Assembly (NCBI RefSeq): GCF_022045235.1
Contig: NW_027266265.1
Coordinates: forward strand, 36,704,001-36,768,000
DNA: 64,000 bases
Direction: 5' to 3'
DNA from: Haliotis cracherodii
Taxonomy: Eukaryota
The position numbers were made by a program, and so were the translations under genes. The notes under the pieces were generated by a model that was not told where the DNA came from, did no database searches, and was given only the letters and a program-made list of their open reading frames with translations. Positions 1 to 64,000 of this stretch are shown here, one piece after another (the first letter of the stretch is position 1; the number at the start of each line of letters is the position of its first letter).

Positions 1-50
1 TTTTACTGACACAAGATAACTGTATATAATACTACCTGTTTTTGTTTCAG

Positions 51-3260: not shown

Positions 3261-3806
3261 CTATTGTTCAAGATGTCCCAAACATAACCCAATATAATCG
3301 GAACAAAAAGTTTGCTTCAGTCAAGTTTAATGATACTGTTCAGAATCATTTATCAATACAAAGGAGATTGCATTTGGTAACTGTAGAGAGTGAAATTCAG
3401 CGGAATAAATGGTCCAACTTTAAAGCGTGTCATAAGTCTTTATAACAACAACCAGACTGTAAAAACAAGTCGTTTGATCATGTCTATCTTTGAAAACACC
3501 TTTGTGTTATACTTTAAGAGCATTTTCTTCTGAAAACACACGTCTTTACTTGTAGATGTACGGTTTTTCTGGGCAACCCTTATATAGTTACACATTGTCA
3601 AACTGATTTGCGCATGTTTTATTCTTGGTAAGAGTTTTGGTCTAAACACACCTTAAAAGAACACAATCATCACTATCACTACTGCTTCATCATGTCAAGG
3701 GCATACGTAAAGGGTAGAGACGATTTATATACTTTCTTCTAATGTTTACGACCTAATACATTTTAGCACAATCTTGCCTTTGACACCCAATGAAATCTGT
3801 TTCAGC

Positions 3807-3996
3807 AGATAATCGAGCCTGAATATTCTCTGGCGTTGACGATTTATGTAGTTAAAGGGTCATCACTGAATGATTATTATATCAATATTCAGGCGTTATC
3901 TATAGAAATTGAGATATCAAATTTAGTGATGCTCGTATTATCACAAATTCCTTGATAATGAAGCGTACAATTATCAAGATAATATGTTGAAGATAA
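3807..3996. other. Inverted-repeat/hairpin region with a WGATAR motif cluster (present in every unit)
   Basis: GCCTGAATATT (3817-3827) pairs with AATATTCAGGC (3884-3894). CTTGATAAT (3951-3959) pairs with ATTATCAAG (3970-3978). Seven WGATAR sites at 3807, 3896, 3938, 3953, 3971, 3977 and 3991. Confidence 0.5.
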
Positions 3997-4147
3997 GAGA
4001 GTTTTCTCAAGAAACGCAGTTGCAAATAAACGCCACAAAACCCTTTTCAGAATCATTCGAAAGCTGTGCTCGAAGCAGCAGAGGCCATTGTACGATTCCG
4101 ACTATAATGATCACAAGCATGTGCGTATGAATGACTATCAGATAGTG

Positions 4148-4408
4148 GAGTAGAATAGGTCTTCAGCAACCCATGCTTGCCGTAAAAGGTGGATATATAT
4201 GCTTGTCGTAAAAGGCGTCTAACGGGATCGGGTGGTCAGGCTCGCTGACTTGGTTGATGCATGTCATCGATCCCAATTGCGTGGATCGATGCTAATGATT
4301 TTAATCACTGGATTGTCTGGTCCAGACTCGATTATTTACAGACCGCCGTCATATAGCTGGAATATTGTTGAGTGCGGCGTTAAACAACCAACCAACCATC
4401 TAACCAAC
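4148..4408 (+). mobile_element. SINE-A (5'-truncated, (CAAC)n tail, 9-bp TSD); one per unit
   Basis: TSD CAGATAGTG at 4139-4147 and 4409-4417; tail AAACAACCAACCAACC; homologous to 1035-1276. Other copies begin at about 8390, 12369, 16348, 20579, 28628, 32870, 37112, 41354, 45596, 49838, 54080, 58322 and 62564. Confidence 0.85.
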
Positions 4409-5014
4409 CAGATAGTGATGATACCTGGCGGTTGCCAAAAAGTAAGCGTATCCTTCCTCATCGGTTCCACCGTCACAAACACATATAAAGACAAGTCAAC
4501 AAAGACCACAAAACAAGCTGTTGTTCATATGTCAATCATGTTTTCAGAAGACATTGGTGTACTTTCGGCTTTTAACAGATACTACACGCATAAAAAGATG
4601 TTGTGAGTTTTCATAGTGACAGTCCCTTTGTGAGAAGAAACCAATATATGTCCCTTTCAGTTAGGAAATAAAGCTGTTGTAGTTTATAGTTAATGTGCAG
4701 TAAGATAAATAAAATTCGGGGAGAATAATGTAGTATCTGGGGACTTCTGCAGTATATTCAGCAGAAGCTATTTTCTTGTGAGCAGGCTGCTGTATTACAC
4801 GGAAACGGTTAGCATAGTTGACCCCGTGTGGTACAGTGCTACTGCAGTACTGTGGCGAGGCTGTACTGGTGTGTTGCGTCAGTTTTCTGGTCTCTTGTTA
4901 TGTCGTATCACACAGATGCATTATAATGTCTGATGTATGTTGCTCCCACATCATATATTTACTGGATACACACTTTTCAGACCATTATCGAATATTTACT
5001 TAATAAAGGTTAAA

Positions 5015-5457: not shown

Positions 5458-5527
5458 TATATATAAAGGACGGGGGAAACTGTTCCATCATCTCTTATCT
5501 TCACCTTCCGTTGAGACACAGATACGA
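5458..5527 (+). promoter_or_regulatory. TATA box, Inr-like start and putative non-coding exon 1 of the Gly-rich gene (copy 1; same in every unit)
   Basis: TATATATAAA at 5458-5467 and TCATCT Inr-like site at ~5488-5493, about 30 nt downstream. Candidate donor GTAAAG at 5528 (alternative GTACTA at 5546). Acceptor ...TTACTCAATAG ends at 5824, 9 nt before AAAATG. Confidence 0.65.
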
Positions 5528-5833
5528 GTAAAGACCAAACTGCAAGTACTATTTTAAGCTTTGCTTGTGATATATATGTATACTTTTAATTTTTGATTCA
5601 TCTGCTGCGCATCTGGCTGTTTTTAACCTTCATGTTGAGCCAATTTATAAAAGTACGAATATGTAACATAAAACGTTCTTGTAAATTGGGAAATATATGA
5701 ATGCGGGTGAAATTAAAACTGATAACATAATTCACAATGAGTGGTGTGAACTGAATTTACCAGATGAGTAACGATAACATGCTATTTTACCTTTCTTGAC
5801 AATGATTTTCACGTTACTCAATAGATACTCAAA

Positions 5834-6441
5834 ATGATGAAGATAGTCGCCGCTCTTGTTGCCTGCTTGGCTGTTACCGTCTTTGCCGAGCCTACCGGTC
5901 TGTATGGTGGAATTGGCGGGTTGAAAGGAGGACTGGGCGGAATTGGCTACGGAATGGGTGGATTGTACGGAGGCCTTGGAGGTCTTGGAGGCTATGGAGG
6001 TCTGTACGGAGGCATGGGAGGTCTATACGGAGGCATGGGAGGTCTATACGGAGGCATGGGAGGTCTATACGGAGGCAAATACGGATACGGCATGGGAGGT
6101 CTGTACGGAGGATTTGGAGGCTATGGTGGTCTCTACGGAATGGGAGGATACGGAATTGGATTGGGAAAAGGTATTTCACAAAATATGATATCGTTTGTTT
6201 ATCGTATCCGTAAATATACCTCCAGTCTCGTTTGCAAAATTGTATAATTTACCTATGTGGTATTACTATTTTCCGCGACAAAGCTGATGACATTTACAAA
6301 ACATCTTTAAAACTATTCTCTGCTTTCTCTAATATTTGGTATAATTTATCATGCAGCCAGTTTCAAGACTTCGTTGTGACTTATCCATACATCCCAACTT
6401 TATTCTACTATTTTTTTGTTTCAGGTATCGGCTATTATTGA
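5834..6441 (+). CDS. Secreted Gly/Tyr-rich GGLY-repeat structural protein, 117 aa, copy 1 (exons 5834-6170 + 6425-6441; carries A16V and L94F relative to the other copies)
   Basis: Signal peptide MMKIVAALVACLAVT(V/A)FA; GGLYGG repeats; donor AAG|GTATTT at 6171; acceptor TTTTTTTGTTTCAG| at 6424. The phase-1 join gives ...GLGK-GIGYY-TGA. AATAAA at 6507-6512. Confidence 0.88.
6008..6076 (+). repeat. Coding 21-bp tandem repeat (GGAGGCATGGGAGGTCTATAC x3 = GGMGGLY)
   Basis: Three perfect units plus a partial fourth; the same count in all 13 gene copies. Confidence 0.9.
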
Positions 6442-6506
6442 GTTATTATCACCTGCAGTGTGATGCTGGCTATTTCTGTATTTTCTCAAATCAATGGAAT
6501 TGGTTC

Positions 6507-6512
6507 AATAAA
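6507..6512 (+). terminator. Polyadenylation signal AATAAA of the Gly-rich gene (present in every copy)
   Basis: AATAAA 66 nt after the spliced stop codon, followed by T/GT-rich sequence. Confidence 0.65.
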
Positions 6513-9500
6513 ATCTTGTCATATTTATTTACGCCTTGAAATTTGTTTGAAAATCTTAATCTGAATTGAATGTTCACAATGGAAGAGTGATCTATGTTTC
6601 TCCATATTGTAAACTGTGGACATAGTACGTGTTGTCGACCAATATCCAAGCACACTTCAATGATATTGCGTTTTACTGCTAGCTGAGATATCAACTACTG
6701 AAATGTGCTATTAAGTTCCTGAGGAAACCGGACATGATGATAAGAGGAGGGATTTTATGCTTGATATATCTCCCACAAAATGTCACTTACCCGAGTTCAT
6801 GTTTCACGGAATATATGATTTGGGCTGCCAGAAAAGGGTTTGATAGCCATTTAAGTACCATAATATCTTGAATTGGCTGTCTGTATTTCAATTTGCATTT
6901 TAAAAACATGCAGCGAAACAAATAAGCAGGCGTGTCAATTTTTGTCAAAGCAGTCATTGACGATATCAAGGGGTAGACAGTGTGCACTGTATTGAAATGC
7001 AAATGTGTGCGCTGTCCTTGAAAATGAGCGATAGTTGTATTCAGAATACAATCTACATGTTGTAATGGCTCTTTGTATAAGTAATATCTGAGCTGCTGCA
7101 ATAAAACAAACCCGAAAGCCATAGTGATGTAGAGCATCAAAACAAATGTTGCAAGATTCTTACTGCTTGGTTAGAAGGGAATGCAAACAGTTGGAATTTC
7201 CATGACAATAACATATCTTTACAGTTTATCAATTACACAAACAAAACGATTGAATTCAAAAGTAACTATTAAATACGCTTGTCCGGGTATAGCTTATCAA
7301 CCTACAAATTATTTGTAATTTCCATCAAACATGTACTTCTTGATTTGATGATGCAATTTAACATTTTGCATACTGCTTATGTAATTAATAGGAGAAGTAT
7401 CTATATAGATATTTAGTTGTGTGTTTACTAACCACCTTCCCTGTAGGTGCTATTTGAAAAATACATATTGATTAAATCAGACCGCGAATTTGAAGATTCC
7501 GAACTGGATTGGTAGGATTGAAGATTACAATGAACAAACAAATAGCTGATATATCCCTATTGTTTGGCTACAAAGCAAAAGTGACAATCATTTATCAATA
7601 CAAAGGAGATTGCATTTGGTAACTGTAGGGAGTGAAATTCAGCGGAATAAATAGTCCAACTTTAAAGCGTGTCATAAGTCTTTATAACAACAACCAGACT
7701 GTAAAAACAAGTCGTTTGATCATGTCTATCTTTGAAAACACCTTTGTGTTATACTTTAAGAGCATTTTCTTCTGAAAACACACGTCTTTACTTTTAGATG
7801 TACGGTTTTTCTGGGCAACCCTTATATAGTTACACATTGTCAAACTGATTTGCGCGTGTTTTATTCTTGGTAAGAGTTTTGGTCTAAACACGCCTTAAAA
7901 GAACACAATCATCACTATCACTACTGCTTCATCATGTCAAGGGCATACGTAAAGGGTAGAGACGATTTATATACTTTCTTCTAATGTTTACGACCTAATA
8001 CATTTTAGCACAATCTTGCCTTTTACACCCAATGAAATCTGTTTCAGCAGATAATCGAGCCTGAATATTCTCTGGCGTTGACGATTTATGTAGTTAAAGG
8101 GTCATCACTGAATGATTATTATATCAATATTCAGGCGTTATCTATAGAAATTGAGATATCAAATTTAGTGATGCTCGTATTATCACAAATTCCTTGATAA
8201 TGAAGCGTACAATTATCAAGATAATATGTTGAAGATAAGAGAGTTTTCTCAAGAAACGCAGTTGCAAATAAACGCCACAAAACCCTTTTCAGAATCATTC
8301 GAAAGCTGTGCTCGAAGCAGCAGAGGCCATTGTACGATTCCGACTATAATGATCACAAGCATGTGCGTATGAATGACTATCAGATAGTGGAGTAGAATAG
8401 GTCTTCAGCAACCCATGCTTGCCGTAAAAGGTGGATATATATGCTTGTCGTAAAAGGCGTCTAACGGGATCGGGTGGTCAGGCTCGCTGACTTGGTTGAT
8501 GCATGTCATCGATCCCAATTGCGTGGATCGATGCTAATGATTTTAATCACTGGATTGTCTGGTCCAGACTCGATTATTTACAGACCGCCGTCATATAGCT
8601 GGAATATTGTTGAGTGCGGCGTTAAACAACCAACCAACCATCTAACCAACCAGATAGTGATGATACCTGGCGGTTGCCAAAAAGTAAGCGTATCCTTCCT
8701 CATCGGTTCCACCGTCACAAACACATATAAAGACTAGTCAACAAAGACCACAAAACAAGCTGTTGTTCATATGTCAATCATGTTTTCAGAAGACATTGGT
8801 GTACTTTCGGCTTTTAACAGATACTACACGCATAAAAAGATGTTGTGAGTTTTCATAGTGACAGTCCCTTTGTGAGAAGAAACCAATATATGTCCCTTTC
8901 AGTTAGGAAATAAAGCTGTTGTAGTTTATAGTTAATGTGCAGTAAGATAAATAAAATTCGGGGAGAATAATGTAGTATCTGGGGACTTCTGCAGTATATT
9001 CAGCAGAAGCTATTTTCTTGTGAGCAGGCTGCTGTATTACACGGAAACGGTTAGCATAGTTGACCCCGTGTGGTACATTGCTACTGCAGTACTGTGGCGA
9101 GGCTGTACTGGTGTGTTGCGTCAGTTTTCTGGTCTCTTGTTATGTCGTATCACACAGATGCATTATAATGTCTGATGTATGTTGCTCCCACATCATATAT
9201 TTACTGGATACACACTTTTCAGACCATTATCGAATATTTACTTAATATAGGTTAAAGTGAGTGAGTGAGTATGGTTTTACGCTGCTTTTAGCAATATTCC
9301 AGCAATATCACGGCGGGGGACATCAGCAATGGGCTTCACACATTGTACCCATGTCGGAAATCGAACCCGTGTCTTCGGCGTAACGAGCGAACGCTTTAAC
9401 CACTAGGCTACCCGACCGCCCCTAAATAATATAGGTTAAACGTTGAGTATCGAGGACTGTTTGAAATGCAATTAGACGATTCCAGAGAGAGTGTCTCTGT

Positions 9501-10075
9501 TTGCCACCTTTATATACGTTGTCTTGTACTTCCTTAATCGATGTTCATGAATACCAGCTCGCATGTGTACCCGTAGGGTGATAACCTCGGGCCCTTTGAT
9601 GCGAAAAGAATGCTTACTTTACACCATTAAGCTGAGGTGCGTTACTTACCTGGAAGTGGCCAGCCCAAGGTAAATCAATCACGTATAATTCACAAATGGT
9701 ATATATAAAGGACGGGGGAAACTGTTCCATCATCTCTTATCTTCACCTTCCGTTGAGACACAGATACGAGTAAAGACCAAACTGCAAGTACTATTTTAAG
9801 CTTTGCTTGTGATATATATGTATACTTTTAATTTTTGATTCATCTGCTGCGCATCTGGCTGTTTTTAACCTTCATGTTGAGCCAATTTATAAAAGTACGA
9901 ATATGTAACATAAAACGTTCTTGTAAATTGGGAAATATATGAATGCGGGTGAAATTAAAACTGATAACATAATTCACAATGAGTGGTGTGAACTGAATTT
10001 ACCAGATGAGTAACGATAACATGCTATTTTACCTTTCTTGACAATGATTTTCACGTTACTCAATAGATACTCAAA

Positions 10076-10683
10076 ATGATGAAGATAGTCGCCGCTCTTG
10101 TTGCCTGCCTGGCTGTTACCGCCTTTGCCGAGCCTACCGGTCTGTATGGTGGAATTGGCGGGTTGAAAGGAGGACTGGGCGGAATTGGCTACGGAATGGG
10201 TGGATTGTACGGAGGCCTTGGAGGTCTTGGAGGCTATGGAGGTCTGTACGGAGGCATGGGAGGTCTATACGGAGGCATGGGAGGTCTATACGGAGGCATG
10301 GGAGGTCTATACGGAGGCAAATACGGATACGGCATGGGAGGTCTGTACGGAGGACTTGGAGGCTATGGTGGTCTCTACGGAATGGGAGGATACGGAATTG
10401 GATTGGGAAAAGGTATTTCACAAAATATGATATCGTTTGTTTATCGTATCCGTAAATATACCTCCAGTCTCGTTTGCAAAATTGTATAATTTACCTATGT
10501 GGTATTACTATTTTCCGCGACAAAGCTGATGACATTTACAAAACATCTTTAAAACTATTCTCTGCTTTCTCTAATATTTGGTATAATTTATCATGCAGCT
10601 AGTTTCAAGACTTCGTTGTGACTTATCCATACATCCCAACTTTATTCTACTATTTTTTTGTTTCAGGTATCGGCTATTATTGA
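10076..10683 (+). CDS. Secreted Gly/Tyr-rich GGLY-repeat protein, copy 2 (two coding exons)
   Basis: Same exon/intron structure as copy 1; intact frame and splice sites; TGA at 10681-10683. Confidence 0.88.
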
Positions 10684-13600
10684 GTTATTATCACCTGCAG
10701 TGTGATGCTGGCTATTTATGTATTTTCTCAAACCAATGGAATTGGTTCAATAAAATCTTGTCATATTTATTTACGCCTTGAAATTTGTTTGAAAATCTTA
10801 ATCTGAATTGAATGTTCACAATGGAAGAGTGATCTATGTTTCTCCATATTGTAAACTGTGGACATAGTACGTGTTGTCGACCAATATCCAAGCACACTTC
10901 AATGATATTGCGTTTTACTGCTAGCTGAGATATCAACTACTGAAATGTGCTATTAAGTTCCTGAGGAAACCGGACATGATGATAAGAGGAGGGATTTTAT
11001 GCTTGATATATCTCCCACAAAATGTCACTTACCCGAGTTCATGTTTCACGGAATATATGATTTGGGCTGCCAGAAAAGGGTTTGATAGCCATTTAAGTAC
11101 CATAATATCTTGAATTGGCTGTCTGTATTTCAATTTGCATTTTAAAAACATGCAGCGAAACAAATAAGCAGGCGTGTCAATTTTTGTCAAAGCAGTCATT
11201 GACGATATCAAGGGGTAGACAGTGTGCACTGTATTGAAATGCAAATGTGTGCGCTGTCCTTGAAAATGAGCGATAGTTGTATTCAGAATACAATCTACAT
11301 GTTGTTATGGCTCTTTGTATAAGTAATATCTGAGCTGCTGCAATAAAACAAACCCGAAAGCCATAGTGATGTAGAGCATCAAAACAAATGTTGCAAGATT
11401 CTTACTGCTTGGTTAGAAGGGAATGCAAACAGTTGGAATTTCCATATTGATTAAATCAGACCGCGAATTTGAAGATTCCGAACTGGATTGGTAGGATTGA
11501 AGATTACAATGAACAAACAAAAAGCTAATATATCCCTATTGTTTGACTACAAAGCAAAAGTGACAATCATTTATCAATACAAAGGAGATTGCATTTGGTA
11601 ACTGTAGAGAGTGAAATTCAGCGGAATAAATAGTCCAACTTTAAAGCGTGTCATAAGTCTTTATAACAACAACCAGACTGTAAAAACAAGTCGTTTGATC
11701 ATGTCTATCTTTGAAAACACCTTTGTGTTATACTTTAAGAGCATTTTCTTCTGAAAACACACGTCTTTACTTTTAGATGTACGGTTTTTCTGGGCAACCC
11801 TTATATAGTTACACATTGTCAAACTGATTTGCGCGTGTTTTATTCTTGGTAAGAGTTTTGGTCTAAACACGCCTTAAAAGAACACAATAATCACTATCAC
11901 TACTGCTTCATCATGTCAAGGGCATACGTAAAGGGTAGAGACGATTTATATACTTTCTTCTAATGTTTACGACCTAATACATTTTAGCACAATCTTGCCT
12001 TTTACACCCAATGAAATCTGTTTCAGCAGATAATCGAGCCTGAATATTCTCTGGCGTTGACGATTTATGTAGTTAAAGGGTCATCACTGAATGATTATTA
12101 TATCAATATTCAGGCGTTATCTATAGAAATTGAGATATCAAATTTAGTGATGCTCGTATTATCACAAATTCCTTGATAATGAAGCGTACAATTATCAAGA
12201 TAATATGTTGAAGATAAGAGAGTTTTCTCAAGAAACGCAGTTGCAAATAAACGCCACAAAACCCTTTTCAGAATCATTCGAAAGCTGTGCTCGAAGCAGC
12301 AGAGGCCATTGTACGATTCCGACTATAATGATCACAAGCATGTGCGTATGAATGACTATCAGATAGTGGAGTAGAATAGGTCTTCAGCAACCCATGCTTG
12401 CCGTAAAAGGTGGATATATATGCTTGTCGTAAAAGGCGTCTAACGGGATCGGGTGGTCAGGCTCGCTGACTTGGTTGATGCATGTCATCGATCCCAATTG
12501 CGTGGATCGATGCTAATGATTTTAATCACTGGATTGTCTGGTCCAGACTCGATTATTTACAGACCGCCGTCATATAGCTGGAATATTGTTGAGTGCGGCG
12601 TTAAACAACCAACCAACCATCTAACCAACCAGATAGTGATGATACCTGGCGGTTGCCAAAAAGTAAGCGTATCCTTCCTCATCGGTTCCACCGTCACAAA
12701 CACATATAAAGACTAGTCAACAAAGACCACAAAACAAGCTGTTGTTCATATGTCAATCATGTTTTCAGAAGACATTGGTGTACTTTCGGCTTTTAACAGA
12801 TACTACACGCATAAAAAGATGTTGTGAGTTTTCATAGTGACAGTCCCTTTGTGAGAAGAAACCAATATATGTCCCTTTCAGTTAGGAAATAAAGCTGTTG
12901 TAGTTTATAGTTAATGTGCAGTAAGATAAATAAAATTCGGGGAGAATAATGTAGTATCTGGGGACTTCTGCAGTATATTCAGCAGAGGCTATTTTCTTGT
13001 GAGCAGGCTGCTGTATTACACGGAAACGGTTAGCATAGTTGACCCCGTGTGGTACAGTGCTACTGCAGTACTGTGGCGAGGCTGTACTGGTGTGTTGCGT
13101 CAGTTTTCTGGTCTCTTGTTATGTCGTATCACACAGATGCATTATAATGTCTGATGTATGTTGCTCCCACATCATATATTTACTGGATACACACTTTTCA
13201 GACCATTATCGAATATTTACTTAATATAGGTTAAAGTGAGTGAGTGAGTATGGTTTTACGCTGCTTTTAGCAATATTCCAGCAATATCACGGCGGGGGAC
13301 ATCAGCAATGGGCTTCACACATTGTACCCATGTCGGAAATCGAACCCGTGTCTTCGGCGTAACGAGCGAACGCTTTAACCACTAGGCTACCCGACCGCCC
13401 CTAAATAATATAGGTTAAACGTTGAGTATCGAGGACTGTTTGAAATGCAATTAGACGATTCCAGAGAGAGTGTCTCTGTTTGCCACCTTTATATACGTTG
13501 TCTTGTACTTCCTTAATCGATGTTCATGAATACCAGCTCGCATGTGTACCCGTAGGGTGATAACCTCGGGCCCTTTGATGCGAAAAGAATGCTTACTTTA

Positions 13601-52131: not shown

Positions 52132-55100
52132 GTTATTATCACCTGCAGTGTGATGCTGGCTATTTATGTATTTTCTCAAACCAATGGAATTGGTTCAATA
52201 AAATCTTGTCATATTTATTTACGCCTTGAAATTTGTTTGAAAATCTTAATCTGAATTGAATGTTCACAATGGAAGAGTGATCTATGTTTCTCCATATTGT
52301 AAACTGTGGACATAGTACGTGTTGTCGACCAATATCCAAGCACACTTCAATGATATTGCGTTTTACTGCTAGCTGAGATATCAACTACTGAAATGTGCTA
52401 TTAAGTTCCTGAGGAAACCGGACATGATGATAAGAGGAGGGATTTTATGCTTGATATATCTCCCACAAAATGTCACTTACCCGAGTTCATGTTTCACGGA
52501 ATATATCATTTGGGCTGCCAGAAAAGGGTTTGATAGCCATTTAAGTACCATAATATCTTGAATTGGCTGTCTGTATTTCAATTTGCATTTTAAAAATATG
52601 CAGCGAAACAAATAAGCAGGCGTGTCAATTTTTGTCAAAGCAGTCATTGACGATATCAAGGGGTAGACAGTGTGCACTGTATTGAAATGCAAATGTGTGC
52701 GCTGTCCTTGAAAATGAGCGATAGTTGTATTCACAATACAATCTACATGTTGTTATGGCTCTTTGTATAAGTAATATCTGAGCTGCTGCAATAAAACAAA
52801 CCCGAAAGCCATAGTGATGTAGAGCATCAAAACAAATGTTGCAAGATTCTTACTGCTTGGTTAGAAGGGAATGCAAACAGTTGGAATTTCCATGACAATA
52901 ACATATCTTTACAGTTTATCAATTACACAAACAAAACGATTGAATTCAAAAGTAACTATTAAATACGCTTGTCCGGGTATAGCTTATCAACCTACAAATT
53001 ATTTGTAATTTCCATCAAACATGTACTTCTTGATTTGATGATGCAATTTAACATTTTGCATACTGCTTATGTAATTAATAGGAGAAGTATCTATATAGAT
53101 ATTTAGTTGTGTGTTTACTAACCACCTTCCCTGTAGGTGCTATTTGAAAAATACATATTGATTAAATCAGACCGCGAATTTGAAGATTCCGAACTGGATT
53201 GGTAGGATTGAAGATTACAATGAACAAACAAATAGCTAATATATCCCTATTGTTTGACTACAAAGCAAAAGTGACAATCATTTATCAATACAAAGGAGAT
53301 TGCATTTGGTAACTGTAGAGAGTGAAATTCAGCGGAATAAATAGTCCAACTTTAAAGCGTGTCATAAGTCTTTATAACAACAACCAGACTGTAAAAACAA
53401 GTCGTTTGATCATGTCTATCTTTGAAAACACCTTTGTGTTATACTTTAAGAGCATTTTCTTCTGAAAACACACGTCTTTACTTTTAGATGTACGGTTTTT
53501 CTGGGCAACCCTTATATAGTTACACATTGTCAAACTGATTTGCGCATGTTTTATTCTTGGTAAGAGTTTTGGTCTAAACACGCCTTAAAAGAACACAATA
53601 ATCACTATCATTACTGCTTCATCATGTCAAGGGCATACGTAAATGGTAGAGACGATTTATATACTTTCTTCTAATGTTTACGACCTAATACATTTTAGCA
53701 CAATCTTGCCTTTTACACCCAATGAAATCTGTTTCAGCAGATAATCGAGCCTGAATATTCTCTGGCGTTGACGATTTATGTAGTTAAAGGGTCATCACTG
53801 AATGATTATTATATCAATATTCAGGCGTTATCTATAGAAATTGAGATATCAATTTTAGTGATGCTCGTATTATCACAACTTCCTTGATAATGAAGTGTAC
53901 AATTATCAAGATAATATGTTGAAGATAAGAGAGTTTTCTCAAGAAACGCAGTTGCAAATAAACGCCACAAAACCCTTTTCAGAATCATTCGAAAGCTGTG
54001 CTCGAAGCAGCAGAGGCCATTGTACGATTCCGACTATAATGATCACAAGCATGTGCGTATGAATGACTATCAGATAGTGGAGTAGAATAGGTCTTCAGCA
54101 ACCCATGCTTGCCGTAAAAGGTGGATATATATGCTTGTCGTAAAAGGCGTCTAACGGGATCGGGTGGTCAGGCTCGCTGACTTGATTGATGCATGTCATC
54201 GATCCCAATTGCGTGGATCGATGCTAATGATTTTAATCACTGGATTGTCTGGTCCAGACTCGATTATTTACAGACCGCCGTCATATAGCTGGAATATTGT
54301 TGAGTGCGGCGTTAAACAACCAACCAACCAACTAACCAACCAGATAGTGATGATACCTGGCGGTTGCCAAAAAGTAAGCGTATCCTTCCTCATCGGTTCC
54401 ACCGTCACAAACACATATAAAGACAAGTCAACAAAGACCACAAAACAAGCTGTTGTTCATATGTCAATCATGTTTTCAGAAGACATTGGTGTACTTTCGG
54501 CTTTTAACAGATACTACACGCATAAAAAGATGTTGTGAGTTTTCATAGTGACAGTCCCTTTGTGAGAAGAAACCAATATATGTCCCTTTCAGTTAGGAAA
54601 TAAAGCTGTTGTAGTTTATAGTTAATGTGCAGTAAGATAAATAAAATTCGGGGAGAATAATGTAGTATCTGGGGACTTCTGCAGTATATTCAGCAGAGGC
54701 TATTTTCTTGTGAGCAGGCTGCTGTATTACACGGAAACGGTTAGCATAGTTGACCCCGTGTGGTACAGTGCTACTGCTGTACTGTGGCGAGGCTGTACTG
54801 GTGTGTTGCGTCAGTTTTCTGGTCTCTTGTTATGTCGTATCACACAGATGCATTATAATGTCTGATGTATGTTGCTCCCACATCATATATTTACTGGATA
54901 CACACTTTTCAGACCGTTATCGAATATTTACTTAATAAAGGTTAAAGTGAGTGAGTGAGTATGGTTTTACGCCGCTTTTAGCAATATTCCAGCAATATTA
55001 CGTCGGGGGACATCAGCAATGGGCTTCACACATTGTACCCATGTCGGAAATCGAACCCGTGTCTTCGGCGTAACGAGCGAACGCTTTAACCACTAGGCTA

Positions 55101-55765
55101 CCCGACCGCCCCTAAATGATATAGGTTAAACGTTGAGTATCGAGGACTGTTTGAAATGCAGTTAGACGATTCCAGAGAGAGTGTCTCTGTTTGCCACCTT
55201 TATATACGTTGTCTTGTACTTCCTTAATCGATGTTCATGAATACCAGCTCGCATGTGTACCCGTAGGGTGATAACCTCGGGCCCTTTGATGCGAAAAGAA
55301 TGCTTACTTTACACCATTAAGCTGAGGTGCGTTACTTACCTGGAAGTGGCCAGCCCAAGGTAAATCAATCACGTATAATTCACAAATGGTATATATAAAG
55401 GACGGGGGAAACTGTTCCATCATCTCTTATCTTCACCTTCCGTTGAGACACAGATACGAGTAAAGACCAAACTGCAAGTACTATTTTAAGCTTTGCTTGT
55501 GATATATATGTATACTTTTAATTTTTGATTCATCTGCTGCGCATCTGGCTGCTTTTAACCTTCATGTTGAGCCAATTTATAAAAGTACGAATATGTAACA
55601 TAAAACGTTCTTGTAAATTGGGAAATATATGAATGCGGGTGAAATTAAAACTGATAACATAATTCACAATGAGTGGTGTGAACTGAATTTACCAGATGAG
55701 TAACGATAACATGCTATTTTACCTTTCTTGACAATGATTTTCACGTTACTCAATAGATACTCAAA

Positions 55766-56373
55766 ATGATGAAGATAGTCGCCGCTCTTGTTGCCTGCCT
55801 GGCTGTTACCGCCTTTGCCGAGCCTACCGGTCTGTATGGTGGAATTGGCGGGTTGAAAGGAGGACTGGGCGGAATTGGCTACGGAATGGGTGGATTGTAC
55901 GGAGGCCTTGGAGGTCTTGGAGGCTATGGAGGTCTGTACGGAGGCATGGGAGGTCTATACGGAGGCATGGGAGGTCTATACGGAGGCATGGGAGGTCTAT
56001 ACGGAGGCAAATACGGATACGGCATGGGAGGTCTGTACGGAGGACTTGGAGGCTATGGTGGTCTCTACGGAATGGGAGGATACGGAATTGGATTGGGAAA
56101 AGGTATTTCACAAAATATGATATCGTTTGTTTATCGTATCCGTAAATATACCTCCAGTCTCGTTTGCAAAATTGTATAATTTACCTATGTGGTATTACTA
56201 TTTTCCGCGACAAAGCTGATGACATTTACAAAACATCTTTAAAACTATTCTCTGCTTTCTCTAATATTTGGTATAATTTATCATGCAGCTAGTTTCAAGA
56301 CTTCGTTGTGACTTATCCATACATCCCAACTTTATTCTACTATTTTTTTGTTTCAGGTATCGGCTATTATTGA
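55766..56373 (+). CDS. Secreted Gly/Tyr-rich GGLY-repeat protein, copy 12
   Basis: Same structure as copy 2; intact. Confidence 0.88.
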
Positions 56374-59300
56374 GTTATTATCACCTGCAGTGTGATGCTG
56401 GCTATTTATGTATTTTCTCAAACCAATGGAATTGGTTCAATAAAATCTTGTCATATTTATTTACGCCTTGAAATTTGTTTGAAAATCTTAATCTGAATTG
56501 AATGTTCACAATGGAAGAGTGATCTATGTTTCTCCATATTGTAAACTGTGGACATAGTACGTGTTGTCGACCAATATCCAAGCACACTTCAATGATATTG
56601 CGTTTTACTGCTAGCTGAGATATCAACTACTGAAATGTGCTATTAAGTTCCTGAGGAAACCGGACATGATGATAAGAGGAGGGATTTTATGCTTGATATA
56701 TCTCCCACAAAATGTCACTTACCCGAGTTCATGTTTCACGGAATATATCATTTGGGCTGCCAGAAAAGGGTTTGATAGCCATTTAAGTACCATAATATCT
56801 TGAATTGGCTGTCTGTATTTCAATTTGCATTTTAAAAATATGCAGCGAAACAAATAAGCAGGCGTGTCAATTTTTGTCAAAGCAGTCATTGACGATATCA
56901 AGGGGTAGACAGTGTGCACTGTATTGAAATGCAAATGTGTGCGCTGTCCTTGAAAATGAGCGATAGTTGTATTCACAATACAATCTACATGTTGTTATGG
57001 CTCTTTGTATAAGTAATATCTGAGCTGCTGCAATAAAACAAACCCGAAAGCCATAGTGATGTAGAGCATCAAAACAAATGTTGCAAGATTCTTACTGCTT
57101 GGTTAGAAGGGAATGCAAACAGTTGGAATTTCCATGACAATAACATATCTTTACAGTTTATCAATTACACAAACAAAACGATTGAATTCAAAAGTAACTA
57201 TTAAATACGCTTGTCCGGGTATAGCTTATCAACCTACGAATTATTTGTAATTTCCATCAAACATGTACTTCTTGATTTGATGATGCAATTTAACATTTTG
57301 CATACTGCTTATGTAATTAATAGGAGAAGTATCTATATAGATATTTAGTTGTGTGTTTACTAACCACCTTCCCTGTAGGTGCTATTTGAAAAATACATAT
57401 TGATTAAATCAGACCGCGAATTTGAAGATTCCGAACTGGATTGGTAGGATTGAAGATTACAATGAACAAACAAATAGCTAATATATCCCTATTGTTTGAC
57501 TACAAAGCAAAAGTGACAATCATTTATCAATACAAAGGAGATTGCATTTGGTAACTGTAGAGAGTGAAATTCAGCGGAATAAATAGTCCAACTTTAAAGC
57601 GTGTCATAAGTCTTTATAACAACAACCAGACTGTAAAAACAAGTCGTTTGATCATGTCTATCTTTGAAAACACCTTTGTGTTATACTTTAAGAGCATTTT
57701 CTTCTGAAAACACACGTCTTTACTTTTAGATGTACGGTTTTTCTGGGCAACCCTTATATAGTTACACATTGTCAAACTGATTTGCGCATGTTTTATTCTT
57801 GGTAAGAGTTTTGGTCTAAACACGCCTTAAAAGAACACAATAATCACTATCACTACTGCTTCATCATGTCAAGGGCATACGTAAATGGTAGAGACGATTT
57901 ATATACTTTCTTCTAATGTTTACGACCTAATACATTTTAGCACAATCTTGCCTTTTACACCCAATGAAATCCGTTTCAGCAGATAATCGAGCCTGAATAT
58001 TCTCTGGCGTTGACGATTTATGTAGTTAAAGGGTCATCACTGAATGATTATTATATCAATATTCAGGCGTTATCTATAGAAATTGAGATATCAAATTTAG
58101 TGATGCTCGTATTATCACAAATTCCTTGATAATGAAGCGTACAATTATCAAGATAATATGTTGAAGATAAGAGAGTTTTCTCAAGAAACGCAGTTGCAAA
58201 TAAACGCCACAAAACCCTTTTCAGAATCATTCGAAAGCTGTGCTCGAAGCAGCAGAGGCCATTGTACGATTCCGACTATAATGATCACAAGCATGTGCGT
58301 ATGAATGACTATCAGATAGTGGAGTAGAATAGGTCTTCAGCAACCCATGCTTGCCGTAAAAGGTGGATATATATGCTTGTCGTAAAAGGCGTCTAACGGG
58401 ATCGGGTGGTCAGGCTCGCTGACTTGATTGATGCATGTCATCGATCCCAATTGCGTGGATCGATGCTAATGATTTTAATCACTGGATTGTCTGGTCCAGA
58501 CTCGATTATTTACAGACCGCCGTCATATAGCTGGAATATTGTTGAGTGCGGCGTTAAACAACCAACCAACCAACTAACCAACCAGATAGTGATGATACCT
58601 GGCGGTTGCCAAAAAGTAAGCGTATCCTTCCTCATCGGTTCCACCGTCACAAACACATATAAAGACAAGTCAACAAAGACCACAAAACAAGCTGTTGTTC
58701 ATATGTCAATCATGTTTTCAGAAGACATTGGTGTACTTTCGGCTTTTAACAGATACTACACGCATAAAAAGATGTTGTGAGTTTTCATAGTGACAGTCCC
58801 TTTGTGAGAAGAAACCAATATATGTCCCTTTCAGTTAGGAAATAAAGCTGTTGTAGTTTATAGTTAATGTGCAGTAAGATAAATAAAATTCGGGGAGAAT
58901 AATGTAGTATCTGGGGACTTCTGCAGTATATTCGGCAGAGGCTATTTTCTTGTGAGCAGGCTGCTGTATTACACGGAAACGGTTAGCATAGTTGACCCCG
59001 TGTGGTACAGTGCTACTGCTGTACTGTGGCGAGGCTGTACTGGTGTGTTGCGTCAGTTTTCTGGTCTCTTGTTATGTCGTATCACACAGATGCATTATAA
59101 TGTCTGATGTATGTTGCTCCCACATCATATATTTACTGGATACACACTTTTCAGACCGTTATCGAATATTTACTTAATAAAGGTTAAAGTGAGTGAGTGA
59201 GTATGGTTTTACGCCGCTTTTAGCAATATTCCAGCAATATTACGTCGGGGGACATCAGCAATGGGCTTCACACATTGTACCCATGTCGGAAATCGAACCC

Positions 59301-60007
59301 GTGTCTTCGGCGTAACGAGCGAACGCTTTAACCACTAGGCTACCCGACCGCCCCTAAATGATATAGGTTAAACGTTGAGTATCGAGGACTGTTTGAAATG
59401 CAGTTAGACGATTCCAGAGAGAGTGTCTCTGTTTGCCACCTTTATATACGTTGTCTTGTACTTCCTTAATCGATGTTCATGAATACCAGCTCGCATGTGT
59501 ACCCGTAGGGTGATAACCTCGGGCCCTTTGATGCGAAAAGAATGCTTACTTTACACCATTAAGCTGAGGTGCGTTACTTACCTGGAAGTGGCCAGCCCAA
59601 GGTAAATCAATCACGTATAATTCACAAATGGTATATATAAAGGACGGGGGAAACTGTTCCATCATCTCTTATCTTCACCTTCCGTTGAGACACAGATACG
59701 AGTAAAGACCAAACTGCAAGTACTATTTTAAGCTTTGCTTGTGATATATATGTATACTTTTAATTTTTGATTCATCTGCTGCGCATCTGGCTGCTTTTAA
59801 CCTTCATGTTGAGCCAATTTATAAAAGTACGAATATGTAACATAAAACGTTCTTGTAAATTGGGAAATATATGAATGCGGGTGAAATTAAAACTGATAAC
59901 ATAATTCACAATGAGTGGTGTGAACTGAATTTACCAGATGAGTAACGATAACATGCTATTTTACCTTTCTTGACAATGATTTTCACGTTACTCAATAGAT
60001 ACTCAAA

Positions 60008-60615
60008 ATGATGAAGATAGTCGCCGCTCTTGTTGCCTGCCTGGCTGTTACCGCCTTTGCCGAGCCTACCGGTCTGTATGGTGGAATTGGCGGGTTGAAA
60101 GGAGGACTGGGCGGAATTGGCTACGGAATGGGTGGATTGTACGGAGGCCTTGGAGGTCTTGGAGGCTATGGAGGTCTGTACGGAGGCATGGGAGGTCTAT
60201 ACGGAGGCATGGGAGGTCTATACGGAGGCATGGGAGGTCTATACGGAGGCAAATACGGATACGGCATGGGAGGTCTGTACGGAGGACTTGGAGGCTATGG
60301 TGGTCTCTACGGAATGGGAGGATACGGAATTGGATTGGGAAAAGGTATTTCACAAAATATGATATCGTTTGTTTATCGTATCCGTAAATATACCTCCAGT
60401 CTCGTTTGCAAAATTGTATAATTTACCTATGTGGTATTACTATTTTCCGCGACAAAGCTGATGACATTTACAAAACATCTTTAAAACTATTCTCTGCTTT
60501 CTCTAATATTTGGTATAATTTATCATGCAGCTAGTTTCAAGACTTCGTTGTGACTTATCCATACATCCCAACTTTATTCTACTATTTTTTTGTTTCAGGT
60601 ATCGGCTATTATTGA
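60008..60615 (+). CDS. Secreted Gly/Tyr-rich GGLY-repeat protein, copy 13
   Basis: Same structure as copy 2; intact. Confidence 0.88.
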
Positions 60616-63600
60616 GTTATTATCACCTGCAGTGTGATGCTGGCTATTTATGTATTTTCTCAAACCAATGGAATTGGTTCAATAAAATCTTGTCATATTT
60701 ATTTACGCCTTGAAATTTGTTTGAAAATCTTAATCTGAATTGAATGTTCACAATGGAAGAGTGATCTATGTTTCTCCATATTGTAAACTGTGGACATAGT
60801 ACGTGTTGTCGACCAATATCCAAGCACACTTCAATGATATTGCGTTTTACTGCTAGCTGAGATATCAACTACTGAAATGTGCTATTAAGTTCCTGAGGAA
60901 ACCGGACATGATGATAAGAGGAGGGATTTTATGCTTGATATATCTCCCACAAAATGTCACTTACCCGAGTTCATGTTTCACGGAATATATCATTTGGGCT
61001 GCCAGAAAAGGGTTTGATAGCCATTTAAGTACCATAATATCTTGAATTGGCTGTCTGTATTTCAATTTGCATTTTAAAAATATGCAGCGAAACAAATAAG
61101 CAGGCGTGTCAATTTTTGTCAAAGCAGTCATTGACGATATCAAGGGGTAGACAGTGTGCACTGTATTGAAATGCAAATGTGTGCGCTGTCCTTGAAAATG
61201 AGCGATAGTTGTATTCAGAATACAATCTACATGTTGTTATGGCTCTTTGTATAAGTAATATCTGAGCTGCTGCAATAAAACAAACCCGAAAGCCATAGTG
61301 ATGTAGAGCATCAAAACAAATGTTGCAAGATTCTTACTGCTTGGTTAGAAGGGAATGCAAACAGTTGGAATTTCCATGACAATAACATATCTTTACAGTT
61401 TATCAATTACACAAACAAAACGATTGAATTCAAAAGTAACTATTAAATACGCTTGTCCGGGTATAGCTTATCAACCTACGAATTATTTGTAATTTCCATC
61501 AAACATGTACTTCTTGATTTGATGATGCAATTTAACATTTTGCATACTGCTTATGTAATTAATAGGAGAAGTATCTATATAGATATTTAGTTGTGTGTTT
61601 ACTAACCACCTTCCCTGTAGGTGCTATTTGAAAAATACATATTGATTAAATCAGACCGCGAATTTGAAGATTCCGAACTGGATTGGTAGGATTGAAGATT
61701 ACAATGAACAAACAAATAGCTAATATATCCCTATTGTTTGACTACAAAGCAAAAGTGACAATCATTTATCAATACAAAGGAGATTGCATTTGGTAACTGT
61801 AGAGAGTGAAATTCAGCGGAATAAATAGTCCAACTTTAAAGCGTGTCATAAGTCTTTATAACAACAACCAGACTGTAAAAACAAGTCGTTTGATCATGTC
61901 TATCTTTGAAAACACCTTTGTGTTATACTTTAAGAGCATTTTCTTCTGAAAACACACGTCTTTACTTTTAGATGTACGGTTTTTCTGGGCAACCCTTATA
62001 TAGTTACACATTGTCAAACTGATTTGCGCATGTTTTATTCTTGGTAAGAGTTTTGGTCTAAACACACCTTAAAAGAACACAATAATCACTATCACTACTG
62101 CTTCATCATGTCAAGGGCATACGTAAATGGTAGAGACGATTTATATACTTTCTTCTAATGTTTACGACCTAATACATTTTAGCACAATCTTGCCTTTTAC
62201 ACCCAATGAAATCTGTTTCAGCAGATAATCGAGCCTGAATATTCTCTGGCGTTGACGATTTATGTAGTTAAAGAGTCATCACTGAATGATTATTATATCA
62301 ATATTCAGGCGTTATCTATAGAAATTGAGATATCAATTTTAGTGATGCTCGTATTATCACAACTTCCTTGATAATGAAGTGTACAATTATCAAGATAATA
62401 TGTTGAAGATAAGAGAGTTTTCTCAAGAAACGCAGTTGCAAATAAACGCCACAAAACCCTTTTCAGAATCATTCGAAAGCTGTGCTCGAAGCAGCAGAGG
62501 CCATTGTACGATTCCGACTATAATGATCACAAGCATGTGCGTATGAATGACTATCAGATAGTGGAGTAGAATAGGTCTTCAGCAACCCATGCTTGCCGTA
62601 AAAGGTGGATATATATGCTTGTCGTAAAAGGCGTCTAACGGGATCGGGTGGTCAGGCTCGCTGACTTGATTGATGCATGTCATCGATCCCAATTGCGTGG
62701 ATCGATGCTAATGATTTTAATCACTGGATTGTCTGGTCCAGACTCGATTATTTACAGACCGCCGTCATATAGCTGGAATATTGTTGAGTGCGGCGTTAAA
62801 CAACCAACCAACCAACTAACCAACCAGATAGTGATGATACCTGGCGGTTGCCAAAAAGTAAGCGTATCCTTCCTCATCGGTTCCACCGTCACAAACACAT
62901 ATAAAGACAAGTCAACAAAGACCACAAAACAAGCTGTTGTTCATATGTCAATCATGTTTTCAGAAGACATTGGTGTACTTTCGGCTTTTAACAGATACTA
63001 CACGCATAAAAAGATGTTGTGAGTTTTCATAGTGACAGTCCCTTTGTGAGAAGAAACCAATATATGTCCCTTTCAGTTAGGAAATAAAGCTGTTGTAGTT
63101 TATAGTTAATGTGCAGTAAGATAAATAAAATTCGGGGAGAATAATGTAGTATCTGGGGACTTCTGCAGTATATTCAGCAGAGGCTATTTTCTTGTGAGCA
63201 GGCTGCTGTATTACACGGAAACGGTTAGCATAGTTGACCCCGTGTGGTACAGTGCTACTGCTGTACTGTGGCGAGGCTGTACTGGTGTGTTGCGTCAGTT
63301 TTCTGGTCTCTTGTTATGTCGTATCACACAGATGCATTATAATGTCTGATGTATGTTGCTCCCACATCATATATTTACTGGATACACACTTTTCAGACCG
63401 TTATCGAATATTTACTTAATAAAGGTTAAAGTGAGTGAGTGAGTATGGTTTTACGCCGCTTTTAGCAATATTCCAGCAATATTACGTCGGGGGACATCAG
63501 CAATGGGCTTCACACATTGTACCCATGTCGGAAATCGAACCCGTGTCTTCGGCGTAACGAGCGAACGCTTTAACCACTAGGCTACCCGACCGCCCCTAAA

Positions 63601-63873
63601 TGATATAGGTTAAACGTTGAGTATCGAGGACTGTTTGAAATGCAGTTAGACGATTCCAGAGAGAGTGTCTCTGTTTGCCACCTTTATATACGTTGTCTTG
63701 TACTTCCTTAATCGATGTTCATGAATACCAGCTCGCATGTGTACCCGTAGGGTGATAACCTCGGGCCCTTTGATGCGAAAAGAATGCTTACTTTACACCA
63801 TTAAGCTGAGGTGCGTTACTTACCTGGAAGTGGCCAGCCCAAGGTAAATCAATCACGTATAATTCACAAATGG

Positions 63874-63943
63874 TATATATAAAGGACGGGGGAAACTGTT
63901 CCATCATCTCTTATCTTCACCTTCCGTTGAGACACAGATACGA
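63874..63943 (+). promoter_or_regulatory. TATA box and non-coding exon 1 of gene copy 14 (CDS falls beyond the window)
   Basis: TATATATAAA at 63874-63883, at the same offset as in the other units. Confidence 0.65.
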
Positions 63944-64000
63944 GTAAAGACCAAACTGCAAGTACTATTTTAAGCTTTGCTTGTGATATATATGTATACT

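What the first reader, a model, noticed from the sequence alone, without database searches (positions are those of the whole stretch)
3344..64000. Recent tandem amplification (at least 14 copies) of a gene for a small secreted GGLY-repeat protein
Seen: a 4.24-kb unit holding a complete Pol II gene repeats head-to-tail. All 13 complete copies keep their frame, splice sites, TATA box and AATAAA, and copies 2-13 encode an identical protein. All structural lesions fall in spacer DNA. Established: homogeneous protein-gene arrays (e.g. histone genes) are typical where large amounts of product are needed quickly. Inference: this is a dosage-amplified locus for a bulk extracellular material such as shell matrix/periostracum, operculum, radula, egg coat or adhesive. 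Such an array would collapse to 1-2 copies in short-read assemblies, so it may be undescribed.
Basis: partly seen in the sequence, partly recalled or inferred. Interest (0 to 1): 0.8.

Follow-up and report, generated by a model that had tools for sequence, protein, structure and literature searches.

The report
Abalone glycine-tyrosine secreted protein gene array
A black abalone chromosome carries about 30 near-identical, head-to-tail, heavily transcribed copies of a small gene for a secreted glycine/tyrosine/leucine-rich protein; this is probably bulk cross-linkable material for the shell's organic layers, so the locus is real and unusually large but of a known kind.

Summary
The window has a 4,242-bp head-to-tail repeat starting at 3344. 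It holds 13 complete three-exon genes and the start of a 14th. All promoters, splice sites and poly(A) signals are intact, copies 2-13 encode identical proteins, and every large lesion lies in spacer.

The array runs beyond the window. It has 31 units over about 134 kb: 30 intact and one broken outside the window. It is one of at least five arrays of an abalone-only family of more than 100 genes in this genome (Haliotis cracherodii).

RNA-like public runs show both introns spliced. Exon word depth is 10^5-10^6, against 10-80 in spacer. Between the arrays on two chromosomes the coding exon differs by 1.2%, while introns and spacer differ by 5-6%.

The product is a 99-residue secreted protein, about 54% Gly and 15% Tyr. 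I infer it is a tyrosine-cross-linked scleroprotein of the shell-forming mantle, like Has-tsfgr1, the shematrins and Lymnaea's glycine-rich candidates. The expressing tissue could not be read because sample names were coded.

This scan had already found sister arrays of the family on other DNA of this genome (s1-834462, s1-823181). RefSeq holds partly fused, automatically named models of the family. I found no paper that describes the arrays.

The parts
3344..64000 (+). Tandem array in the window: 13 complete units and the first 2.2 kb of a 14th. Basic period 4,242 bp. The array continues to about window coordinate 137,500 (31 units in all).
5460..6532 (+). Gene copy 1, TATA box to poly(A) site. 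Its protein differs from the others by A16V and L94F.
9702..10774 (+). Gene copy 2. Its unit lacks 263 bp of downstream spacer.
13681..14753 (+). Gene copy 3. Its unit lacks the same 263 bp and 11 bp more.
17649..18721 (+). Gene copy 4.
21880..22952 (+). Gene copy 5.
23896..27706 (-). 5'-truncated I-type LINE with a 1,070-codon ORF (partial endonuclease, reverse transcriptase, RNase H), inserted in the spacer of unit 5. A passenger element.
29940..31012 (+). Gene copy 6, used as the reference copy. TATA box at 29940. Exon 1 (5'UTR) runs from about 29970 to 30021. Intron 1 is 30022-30304 (GC-AG). Exon 2 is 30305-30650, with the ATG at 30314. Intron 2 is 30651-30904. Exon 3 starts at 30905, with the stop codon at 30919-30921, AATAAA at 30987 and the transcript end near 31010.
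34182..35254 (+). Gene copy 7. Shares the synonymous T>A with copy 6.
38424..39496 (+). Gene copy 8.
42666..43738 (+). Gene copy 9.
46908..47980 (+). Gene copy 10.
51150..52222 (+). Gene copy 11.
55392..56464 (+). Gene copy 12.
59634..60706 (+). Gene copy 13.
63876..64000 (+). Start of gene copy 14 (TATA box, exon 1, intron 1 donor), cut by the window's end. The rest is intact in the genome.
28628..28886 (.). Interspersed-repeat (SINE-like) insertion present in the C2 units aligned and absent from the sister array on contig C80. A 93% identical copy lies outside the array at 1071-1260.
29495..29666 (.). Second SINE-like insertion in the C2 units, absent from the C80 units. It is very abundant in all four runs laid.

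Best explanation
Shown:
- This is a genuine, young, concertedly evolving tandem array of 31 units, 14 of them in the window. Each unit holds a complete TATA-driven three-exon gene.
- Exon 1 is untranslated. Exon 2 encodes 112 of the 117 codons. Exon 3 encodes the last five residues and the 3'UTR.
- The gene family is transcribed and spliced at very high level in some samples.
- The coding exon is conserved about five times better than introns and spacer between arrays on different chromosomes.

Read from the sequence:
- An 18-residue signal peptide (cleavage after AFA) is removed, leaving a 99-residue protein.
- The 94 of its residues encoded by exon 2 are about 54% Gly, 15% Tyr, 15% Leu and 6% Met, with no Cys and pI about 8.8.
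- The protein is built of GGxGGLY heptads, and every Tyr in that part is followed by Gly.

Inferred:
- The many identical copies exist to supply a large amount of one product quickly.
- The product is a secreted scleroprotein precursor. Its Gly-flanked tyrosines are cross-linked outside the cell by peroxidase or tyrosinase into an insoluble organic layer of the shell system: periostracum, larval shell or organic framework, made at the mantle edge.
- Unequal crossing-over keeps the array uniform and varies its length.
For: Array and gene integrity.

Concerted evolution:
- Units 8-19 differ by 0-3 substitutions per kb, edge units by 6-17 per kb, and the last unit by about 59 per kb.
- Alternate units match best, so there is a two-unit higher-order repeat.
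- Two SINE-like insertions lie in the C2 units aligned but not in the sister array. The units therefore descend from one founder that already carried them.

Expression:
- In runs X1 and X2 (two labelled organisms, two studies) exon 2 word depth is 3x10^5 to 1x10^6. Introns reach 7x10^2 to 4x10^3 and spacer 10-80.
- Depth rises just after the TATA box and falls after AATAAA.
- Contigs join 30650|30905 (the 254-nt intron 2) and 30021|30305 (intron 1).

Selection:
- In units 2-13 there are no variants in 830 bp of promoter, exon 2 and intron 2. Spacer has 39 in 2,969 bp (Fisher p about 1e-4, though sites are linked).
- Between the C2 and C80 arrays, exon 2 has 4 mismatches in 331 positions. Introns have 31 in 528 (p about 6e-4).
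- All length changes in the 30 intact genes are in-frame heptad gains or losses.

Family:
- Homologues with the same signal peptide and the same C-terminal GLGKGIGYY occur in H. asinina as a run of consecutive RefSeq genes on one chromosome.
- Further arrays lie on C80, C1 (two) and C18 of this genome.

Mechanism by analogy:
- Has-tsfgr1 is a 114-residue Gly/Leu/Tyr-repeat abalone protein made at the larval shell field and mantle edge (PMC2034539).
- Lymnaea's secreted Gly/Tyr-rich candidates sit next to the peroxidase zone and were proposed as dityrosine substrates because Gly flanks their Tyr. They also escaped shell proteomics (PMC6007483).
Against: - No tissue or stage is known for the expressing runs, because names were coded.
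- Depths are sums over contigs at 90% likeness or more, so they describe the family rather than this array alone.
- The motifs are absent from the text of the H. asinina shell proteome paper and from 6.2 million characters of H. laevigata shell proteome supplements. That argues against an abundant soluble component of adult calcified layers.
- No DOPA, dityrosine or protein-level evidence exists.
- Homology to Has-tsfgr1 itself could not be tested, because its sequence is not in the tools.
- Copy number rests on the assembly. The DNA-like run X15 shows even, high depth over the unit, but there was no single-copy control.
Confidence: 0.6

Rival explanations
1. Bulk secreted structural material for something other than the shell: larval operculum, radula or jaw, egg coat, or pedal adhesive or mucus.
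For: The same sequence evidence fits: a signal peptide, a Gly/Tyr-rich cross-linkable body, many copies and very high transcript level. The motif is absent from adult shell proteomes. The motif GGLYGG also occurs in papers on squid ring-teeth tandem-repeat proteins. The nearest language-model look-alikes of the H. asinina homologue are arthropod cuticle proteins, but at scores of 0.77-0.80, which the tool rates as chance level.
Against: The only described abalone protein of this type is made in shell-forming cells. A paralogue on C18 carries that protein's motif and a homologous N-terminus. Nothing points to a particular alternative tissue.
Confidence: 0.22
2. A glycine-rich antimicrobial or defence peptide (ctenidin, acanthoscurrin or nematode NLP/CNC type), amplified for mucosal or haemocyte immunity.
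For: NCBI's automatic names for relatives are 'ctenidin-1-like' and 'neuropeptide-like protein 31'. The protein is small, secreted, Gly/Tyr-rich and mildly basic. Gastropod mucus holds Gly/Leu-rich peptides reported as antibacterial.
Against: An exhaustive profile search found no arthropod or nematode peptide, only four Haliotis proteins. Net charge is only about +2, and the C-terminus is GIGYY with no Gly-basic amidation signal. From my own knowledge, more than 100 near-identical genes is far more than known clusters of such peptide genes.
Confidence: 0.12
3. A neutral passenger amplification, or an assembly artefact, with no dosage function.
For: Copy number was not confirmed by spanning reads here. 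Spacer and gene were amplified together.
Against: Units carry distinct, phylogenetically structured indels, a LINE and SNPs, which a collapsed or expanded artefact would not give. All 30 intact genes keep their frame, and the coding exon is less variable than spacer. Transcripts are abundant and spliced. H. asinina has a comparable cluster. The DNA-like run X15 covers the whole unit evenly at about 1,100-1,200x, while single-contig variants sit at about 35-43x. That hints at tens of copies, though it is only a rough internal comparison.
Confidence: 0.04

Closest known systems
[quoted passage not shown] 2007, PMC2034539)
   Same: An abalone gene of about 114 codons with a 17-residue signal peptide and a mature protein of Gly/Leu/Tyr repeats ending in Tyr. 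It is expressed in the larval shell field and at the mantle edge. A paralogue on C18 of this genome carries its reported GGYGLGL motif and a 17-residue signal peptide. Its N-terminus is homologous to this family (hhalign probability 98%, E 4e-14).
   Different: The window's protein has GGMGGLY heptads and ends in GIGYY, not GYKGY. Direct homology to Has-tsfgr1 was not testable. Has-tsfgr1 was described as a single transcript, with no array reported.
[quoted passage not shown]
   Same: Secreted, repetitive, glycine-rich, with a C-terminus ending in Tyr, made at the mantle edge, and encoded by tandemly arranged genes: five in two scaffolds. RefSeq names a relative in this genome 'shematrin-like protein 2'.
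   Different: No detectable sequence homology. The oyster has five diverged genes, against about 30 near-identical copies per array here.
Lymnaea stagnalis glycine-rich shell-forming candidates Lstag-sfc-6, -7 and -8 (PMC6007483)
   Same: Secreted, basic, Gly/Tyr/Leu-rich low-complexity proteins with Gly-flanked Tyr. They were proposed as peroxidase substrates for periostracum cross-linking and were not detected by shell proteomics.
   Different: No homology was found, no array is reported, and they are also Asn-rich.
Classical dosage arrays (tandem histone gene repeats; own knowledge)
   Same: Head-to-tail units, each holding complete genes, homogenised by unequal exchange, with uniform centres and diverged edges, and high output.
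   Different: The product is a lineage-restricted extracellular protein. The genes have introns and poly(A) signals.
Glycine-rich antimicrobial peptides (ctenidins, acanthoscurrins, C. elegans NLP-31)
   Same: Small, secreted and Gly/Tyr-rich. They are the source of the automatic names of relatives.
   Different: No homology, weak charge, and no amidation signal.

Membership tests
Shematrin family (Pinctada) | Detectable sequence homology to shematrins | tested here: not met
   A profile HMMER search of 1.84 billion representatives returned only four proteins, all Haliotis. The word-index searches gave the same.
Shematrin family (Pinctada) | Secreted, repetitive, glycine-rich protein whose C-terminal motif ends in tyrosine (as summarised in PMC2034539) | tested here: met
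   Signal peptide, 54% Gly, heptad repeats, ends in GIGYY. The basic cluster I recall in shematrin C-termini is absent (own knowledge, not checked).
Shematrin family (Pinctada) | Mantle-edge expression and presence in the prismatic layer | not testable with these tools
   Run and sample names were coded. The motif is absent from abalone shell proteome papers.
Has-tsfgr1-type abalone Gly/Leu/Tyr mantle proteins | About 114-residue precursor: signal peptide, short N-terminal piece, Gly/Leu/Tyr repeats, short C-terminal piece ending in Tyr | tested here: met
   117 codons with the same layout.
Has-tsfgr1-type abalone Gly/Leu/Tyr mantle proteins | GGYGLGL repeat motif and GYKGY C-terminus | tested here: not met
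   The window's gene has GGMGGLY repeats and ends in GIGYY. The GGYGLGL motif occurs in a paralogous cluster on C18, whose N-terminus is homologous. No GYKGY end was found there either.
Has-tsfgr1-type abalone Gly/Leu/Tyr mantle proteins | Sequence homology to Has-tsfgr1 itself | not tested
Has-tsfgr1-type abalone Gly/Leu/Tyr mantle proteins | Expression in the shell field and the outer mantle fold | not testable with these tools
   Expression is shown, but the tissue is unknown.
Glycine-rich antimicrobial peptides (ctenidin / acanthoscurrin / NLP) | Homology, or a strongly cationic mature peptide with a C-terminal amidation signal | tested here: not met
   No such hit. Three Lys against one Glu, pI 8.8, ends in YY.
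Dosage-type tandem gene array | Head-to-tail units, each with a complete, intact gene and its own promoter | tested here: met
   13 of 13 copies intact in the window, and 30 of 31 units over the whole array.
Dosage-type tandem gene array | Concerted evolution: near-identical core, diverged edges | tested here: met
Dosage-type tandem gene array | Very high transcript output | tested here: met
   at family level and from contig word depths only.

The most novel reading that the evidence does not exclude
The five or more arrays (over 100 genes) form one concerted-evolution system. Its coding exon is kept nearly identical between different chromosomes, either by inter-array gene conversion or by selection at synonymous sites. 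Together the arrays encode the main tyrosine-cross-linked scleroprotein of the abalone periostracum or larval shell, the abalone counterpart of the Gly/Tyr/DOPA-rich periostracum precursor of mussels. Array copy number would then be a heritable dial for how fast the shell is built.
Probability: 0.2. Interest if true: 0.6.

Novelty: new member of a known kind. Interest (0 to 1): 0.4.

Why it matters
Mollusc shell-forming secretomes are known to be rich in fast-evolving, lineage-restricted, glycine-rich proteins and in small tandem clusters. Here one such gene is amplified on the scale of a macrosatellite, about 30 near-identical copies per array and more than 100 genes in the genome.

This gives three things:
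- a clean natural case of dosage amplification and concerted evolution of an extracellular structural gene;
- a warning that automatic annotation fuses such units into false long 'spidroin-like', 'PE-PGRS-like' or 'shematrin-like' models;
- a concrete candidate for the insoluble, proteomics-invisible organic layer of abalone shells.

Copy-number variation at these arrays could matter for shell growth in farmed and endangered abalone.

Tried and rejected
- Tandem Repeats Finder found nothing because its longest period is 500 bp. K-mer offsets were used instead.
- Pfam found no family for the exon 2 peptide.
- The protein atlas could not read the new sequence. For the H. asinina homologue it gave only arthropod cuticle look-alikes at chance-level scores.
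I inferred the H. asinina cluster from consecutive RefSeq accessions on one contig and did not see its DNA.
- BLASTP of the window's exon 2 peptide against the C18 paralogue was not significant, because of composition correction. A profile comparison was significant.
- A doubled GGYGLGL pattern found nothing in the genome. The single motif found the C18 cluster.
- I found no GYKGY terminal exon downstream of the C18 gene.
- The bacterial promoter and terminator scan and the tRNA scan of a unit gave nothing useful.
- Two haplotype copies of one locus: rejected for C2 against C80, because their flanks share only short repeats.
- I first read the '3,567-bp insertion' in unit 14 as a transposon. 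It is an extra unit with a 404-bp deletion.
- Searches used exon 2 alone. The joined two-exon model was not sent to any search tool. A script translated the two coding exons together only to check the frame and compare copies.


Full report
**Observation.** The window is dominated by a head-to-tail repeat. The commonest distance between repeated 20-mers is 4,242 bp (33,812 pairs). Minor classes of 3,979, 3,968, 4,231 and 8,060 bp also occur. One unit aligns to 3344-64000 at 99.0-100% identity. Exact anchors find 14 TATA boxes and 13 of each other signal: start codon, both donors, both acceptors and the AATAAA context. Copies 2-13 encode the same protein. Copy 1 has A16V and L94F.

The period variants all come from spacer lesions:
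- a 263-bp deletion in units 2 and 3;
- 11-bp indels;
- a 3.8-kb 5'-truncated LINE (reverse transcriptase and RNase H, minus strand) at 23896-27706 in unit 5.

One correction is that intron 1 has a GC-AG donor.

**Extent and genome.** The window is G000:C2:36,704,001-36,768,000. A 38-base signal-peptide pattern finds 64 sites in the genome:
- 30 in this array (C2:36,709,834-36,839,771);
- 28 in a second array on contig C80 (51.27-51.39 Mb, period about 3.99 kb);
- 6 scattered copies.

I fetched the rest of the C2 array. All 30 genes have an open exon 2, and they differ only by in-frame gains or losses of 7-residue repeats and a few substitutions. A 31st unit, at window coordinates 66002-69568, lost intron 1, the ATG and the signal peptide through a 404-bp deletion.

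A search with a RefSeq relative revealed further arrays:
- C1:76.40-76.46 Mb;
- C1:77.47-77.54 Mb;
- C80:56.20-56.22 Mb;
- C18:9.19-9.24 Mb.

That search had 748 first-look candidates. Contig C1 is 89,134,964 bases long. That is exactly the length of the contig encoding NCBI's Haliotis cracherodii protein XP_071095146.1, so the genome is the black abalone RefSeq assembly.

**Age and dynamics.** Units 8-19 differ from each other by 0-3 substitutions per kb. Units 1-7 and 20-22 differ by 3-10 per kb, units 23-29 by 11-17 per kb, and the last unit by about 59 per kb. Alternate units match best, which indicates a two-unit higher-order repeat. This is the pattern expected from repeated unequal exchange in the core of an array.

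Two SINE-like insertions lie in the C2 units aligned and are missing from the C80 units. The C2 units therefore descend from one founder that already carried them. The flanks of the two arrays are unrelated, so they are separate loci and not haplotype copies.

**Transcription.** The one run search returned coded names only, so no tissue can be named. Contigs of four runs were laid on unit 6.

| Run | Exon 2 word depth | Introns | Spacer |
|---|---|---|---|
| X1 and X2 (two organism labels, two studies) | 3x10^5 to 1x10^6 | 7x10^2 to 4x10^3 | 10-80 |
| X6 | about 5, flat over the unit | about 5 | about 5 |
| X15 | about 1,100-1,200, flat over the non-repetitive parts (DNA-like) | same | same |

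In X1 and X2, depth rises in the bin that holds the TATA box and exon 1 and collapses after AATAAA. Contigs skip exactly the 254-nt intron 2. Loose ends join 30021 to the first bases of exon 2. X2 also shows a junction 14-15 nt further downstream.

X15 had no single-copy control. Single-contig variants there sit at about 35-43x, which hints at tens of copies but does not measure them. All depths are sums over contigs at least 90% alike, so they describe the family rather than this array alone, and contigs cannot give true expression levels.

**Selection.** Among units 2-13 there is no variant in 830 bp of promoter, exon 2 and intron 2. The spacer has 39 variants in 2,969 bp. Sites are linked, so the p-value of about 1e-4 is rough.

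Divergence between one C2 unit and one C80 unit:

| Region | Mismatches |
|---|---|
| Exon 2 | 1.2% (4 of 331) |
| Intron 1 | 5.7% |
| Intron 2 | 6.1% |
| Exon 3 coding end plus 3'UTR | 6.5% |
| Downstream spacer | 5.4% |

Exon 2 against the two introns gives Fisher p about 6e-4. Three of the four exon 2 differences are conservative Met/Val/Ile exchanges, and the first 50 codons are identical at every base. So the coding exon is protected, by selection that reaches synonymous sites or by exon-limited conversion between arrays.

**The protein.** I did all searches with exon 2 alone (112 of 117 codons) and did not search the joined model. The first 18 residues form a typical signal peptide with Ala-Phe-Ala before the predicted cut. 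The 94 exon 2 residues of the mature protein are 54% Gly, 15% Tyr, 15% Leu, 6% Met, 3% Ile and 3% Lys, with one Glu, no Cys and pI 8.8. All 14 tyrosines in that part are followed by Gly, and five GGxGGLY heptads form the core. Exon 3 adds the last five residues, which end in two tyrosines.

Pfam finds nothing. Word-index searches and an exhaustive profile search of 1.84 billion representatives find only Haliotis proteins:
- H. asinina 'glycine-rich protein-like' and 'neuropeptide-like protein 31';
- H. rubra 'ctenidin-1-like';
- H. cracherodii 'shematrin-like protein 2'.

The signal peptide and the C-terminal GLGKGIGYY are conserved across species, while the repeat core varies. In H. asinina the relatives carry near-consecutive accessions (XP_067657799 to XP_067657849) on one 52.85-Mb chromosome. 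They include several genes with identical products and a 1,967-residue 'PE-PGRS-like' model that must be a fusion of units. The H. cracherodii models of 346 and 979 residues are fusions of the same kind. The family is therefore abalone-restricted as far as sequence can tell, clustered in at least two species, and poorly annotated.

**What it most likely does.** Nothing here shows the function directly. The case for a cross-linked shell-system scleroprotein rests on composition, secretion, dosage and analogy.

[quoted passage not shown] It is high in larvae and off in animals over 20 mm (PMC2034539).
- Its reported GGYGLGL motif occurs in this genome in a cluster on C18. That cluster's gene has a 17-residue signal peptide, and its N-terminus is homologous to this family (hhalign probability 98%, E 4e-14).
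- In Lymnaea, secreted Gly/Tyr-rich proteins with Gly-flanked tyrosines are expressed beside the peroxidase zone. They were proposed as dityrosine substrates of the periostracum and were also invisible to shell proteomics (PMC6007483).
- Tandem clusters of glycine-rich shell genes are known in the pearl oyster: five shematrin genes (PMC4759782).

Against a role in adult calcified layers, the motifs are absent from the text of the H. asinina shell proteome paper and from the H. laevigata supplements. Only three lysines and expected cross-linking could explain that absence, but it keeps other materials open: operculum, radula, egg coat, adhesive. The antimicrobial-peptide reading suggested by the automatic names has no homology support, and the protein lacks the charge and amidation signal of those peptides.

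**Novelty.** I found no paper describing these arrays. The kind is known: lineage-restricted, glycine-rich, tandemly duplicated mantle secretome genes. What is new is the scale and uniformity, the multi-chromosome set of arrays, and the exon-limited conservation between them. This scan had already reported sister arrays of the same family elsewhere in this genome (s1-834462, s1-823181). My results agree with those notes.

**Limits.**
- The atlas could not read the new sequence.
- The reads tools gave contigs and coded names only.

Noticed in passing
window 50-397 (+): A terminal coding exon just left of the array. It has a hydrophobic segment, a charged loop and a final transmembrane helix. 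It gives a weak, below-cut-off Pfam match to the neurotransmitter-gated ion-channel transmembrane region (E 6.5e-05, 23.7 bits against a cut-off of 28.1). Probably the last exon of a Cys-loop receptor subunit.
   Followed up: partly
window 7204-7463 (unit 1 coordinates) and 23895/23896: The right edge of the 263-bp spacer segment deleted in units 2 and 3 lies about 4 bp from the LINE insertion point in unit 5 (alignment columns 31681-31943 against 31947 of unit 6). The spot may be fragile or targeted.
   Followed up: partly
window-coordinate 66002-69568 (C2:36,770,002-36,773,568, locus L001): The only broken unit of the array. A 404-bp deletion removes most of intron 1, the ATG and the signal peptide, while the promoter and the rest of the unit remain 99.6-99.9% identical to their neighbours.
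   Followed up: yes
window 30022-30027 and the same place in all 14 units: Intron 1 uses a GC donor (GCAAGT) in every copy, confirmed by RNA contig ends. Run X2 also shows a junction 14-15 nt further downstream.
   Followed up: partly
L007:843 and L007:4945 (C80 array): Some C80 copies are longer through duplication of a block of heptads, and they carry Cys in place of Tyr (GGLCGG). These are the only cysteines I saw in the mature proteins translated from the C2 and C80 arrays.
   Followed up: no
L016:5584(-) and L016:7928(+) (C80:51.027-51.030 Mb); L015:3748 (C23): A head-to-head pair of family genes with several non-conservative changes, and a degenerate copy on C23 whose start codon is lost. 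These are likely decaying dispersed copies.
   Followed up: no
H. cracherodii and H. asinina RefSeq models (P0007, P0008, P0009): Automatic annotation chains neighbouring units into single long models of 346, 979 and 1,967 residues, named shematrin-like, spidroin-1-like and PE-PGRS-like. P0008 visibly contains three signal peptides.
   Followed up: partly
window 1071-1260 and 28628-28886 (and each unit): Copies of one interspersed repeat lie inside and outside the array (93% identity). A second, very abundant SINE-like element at 29495-29666 dominates the depth in every run laid.
   Followed up: partly
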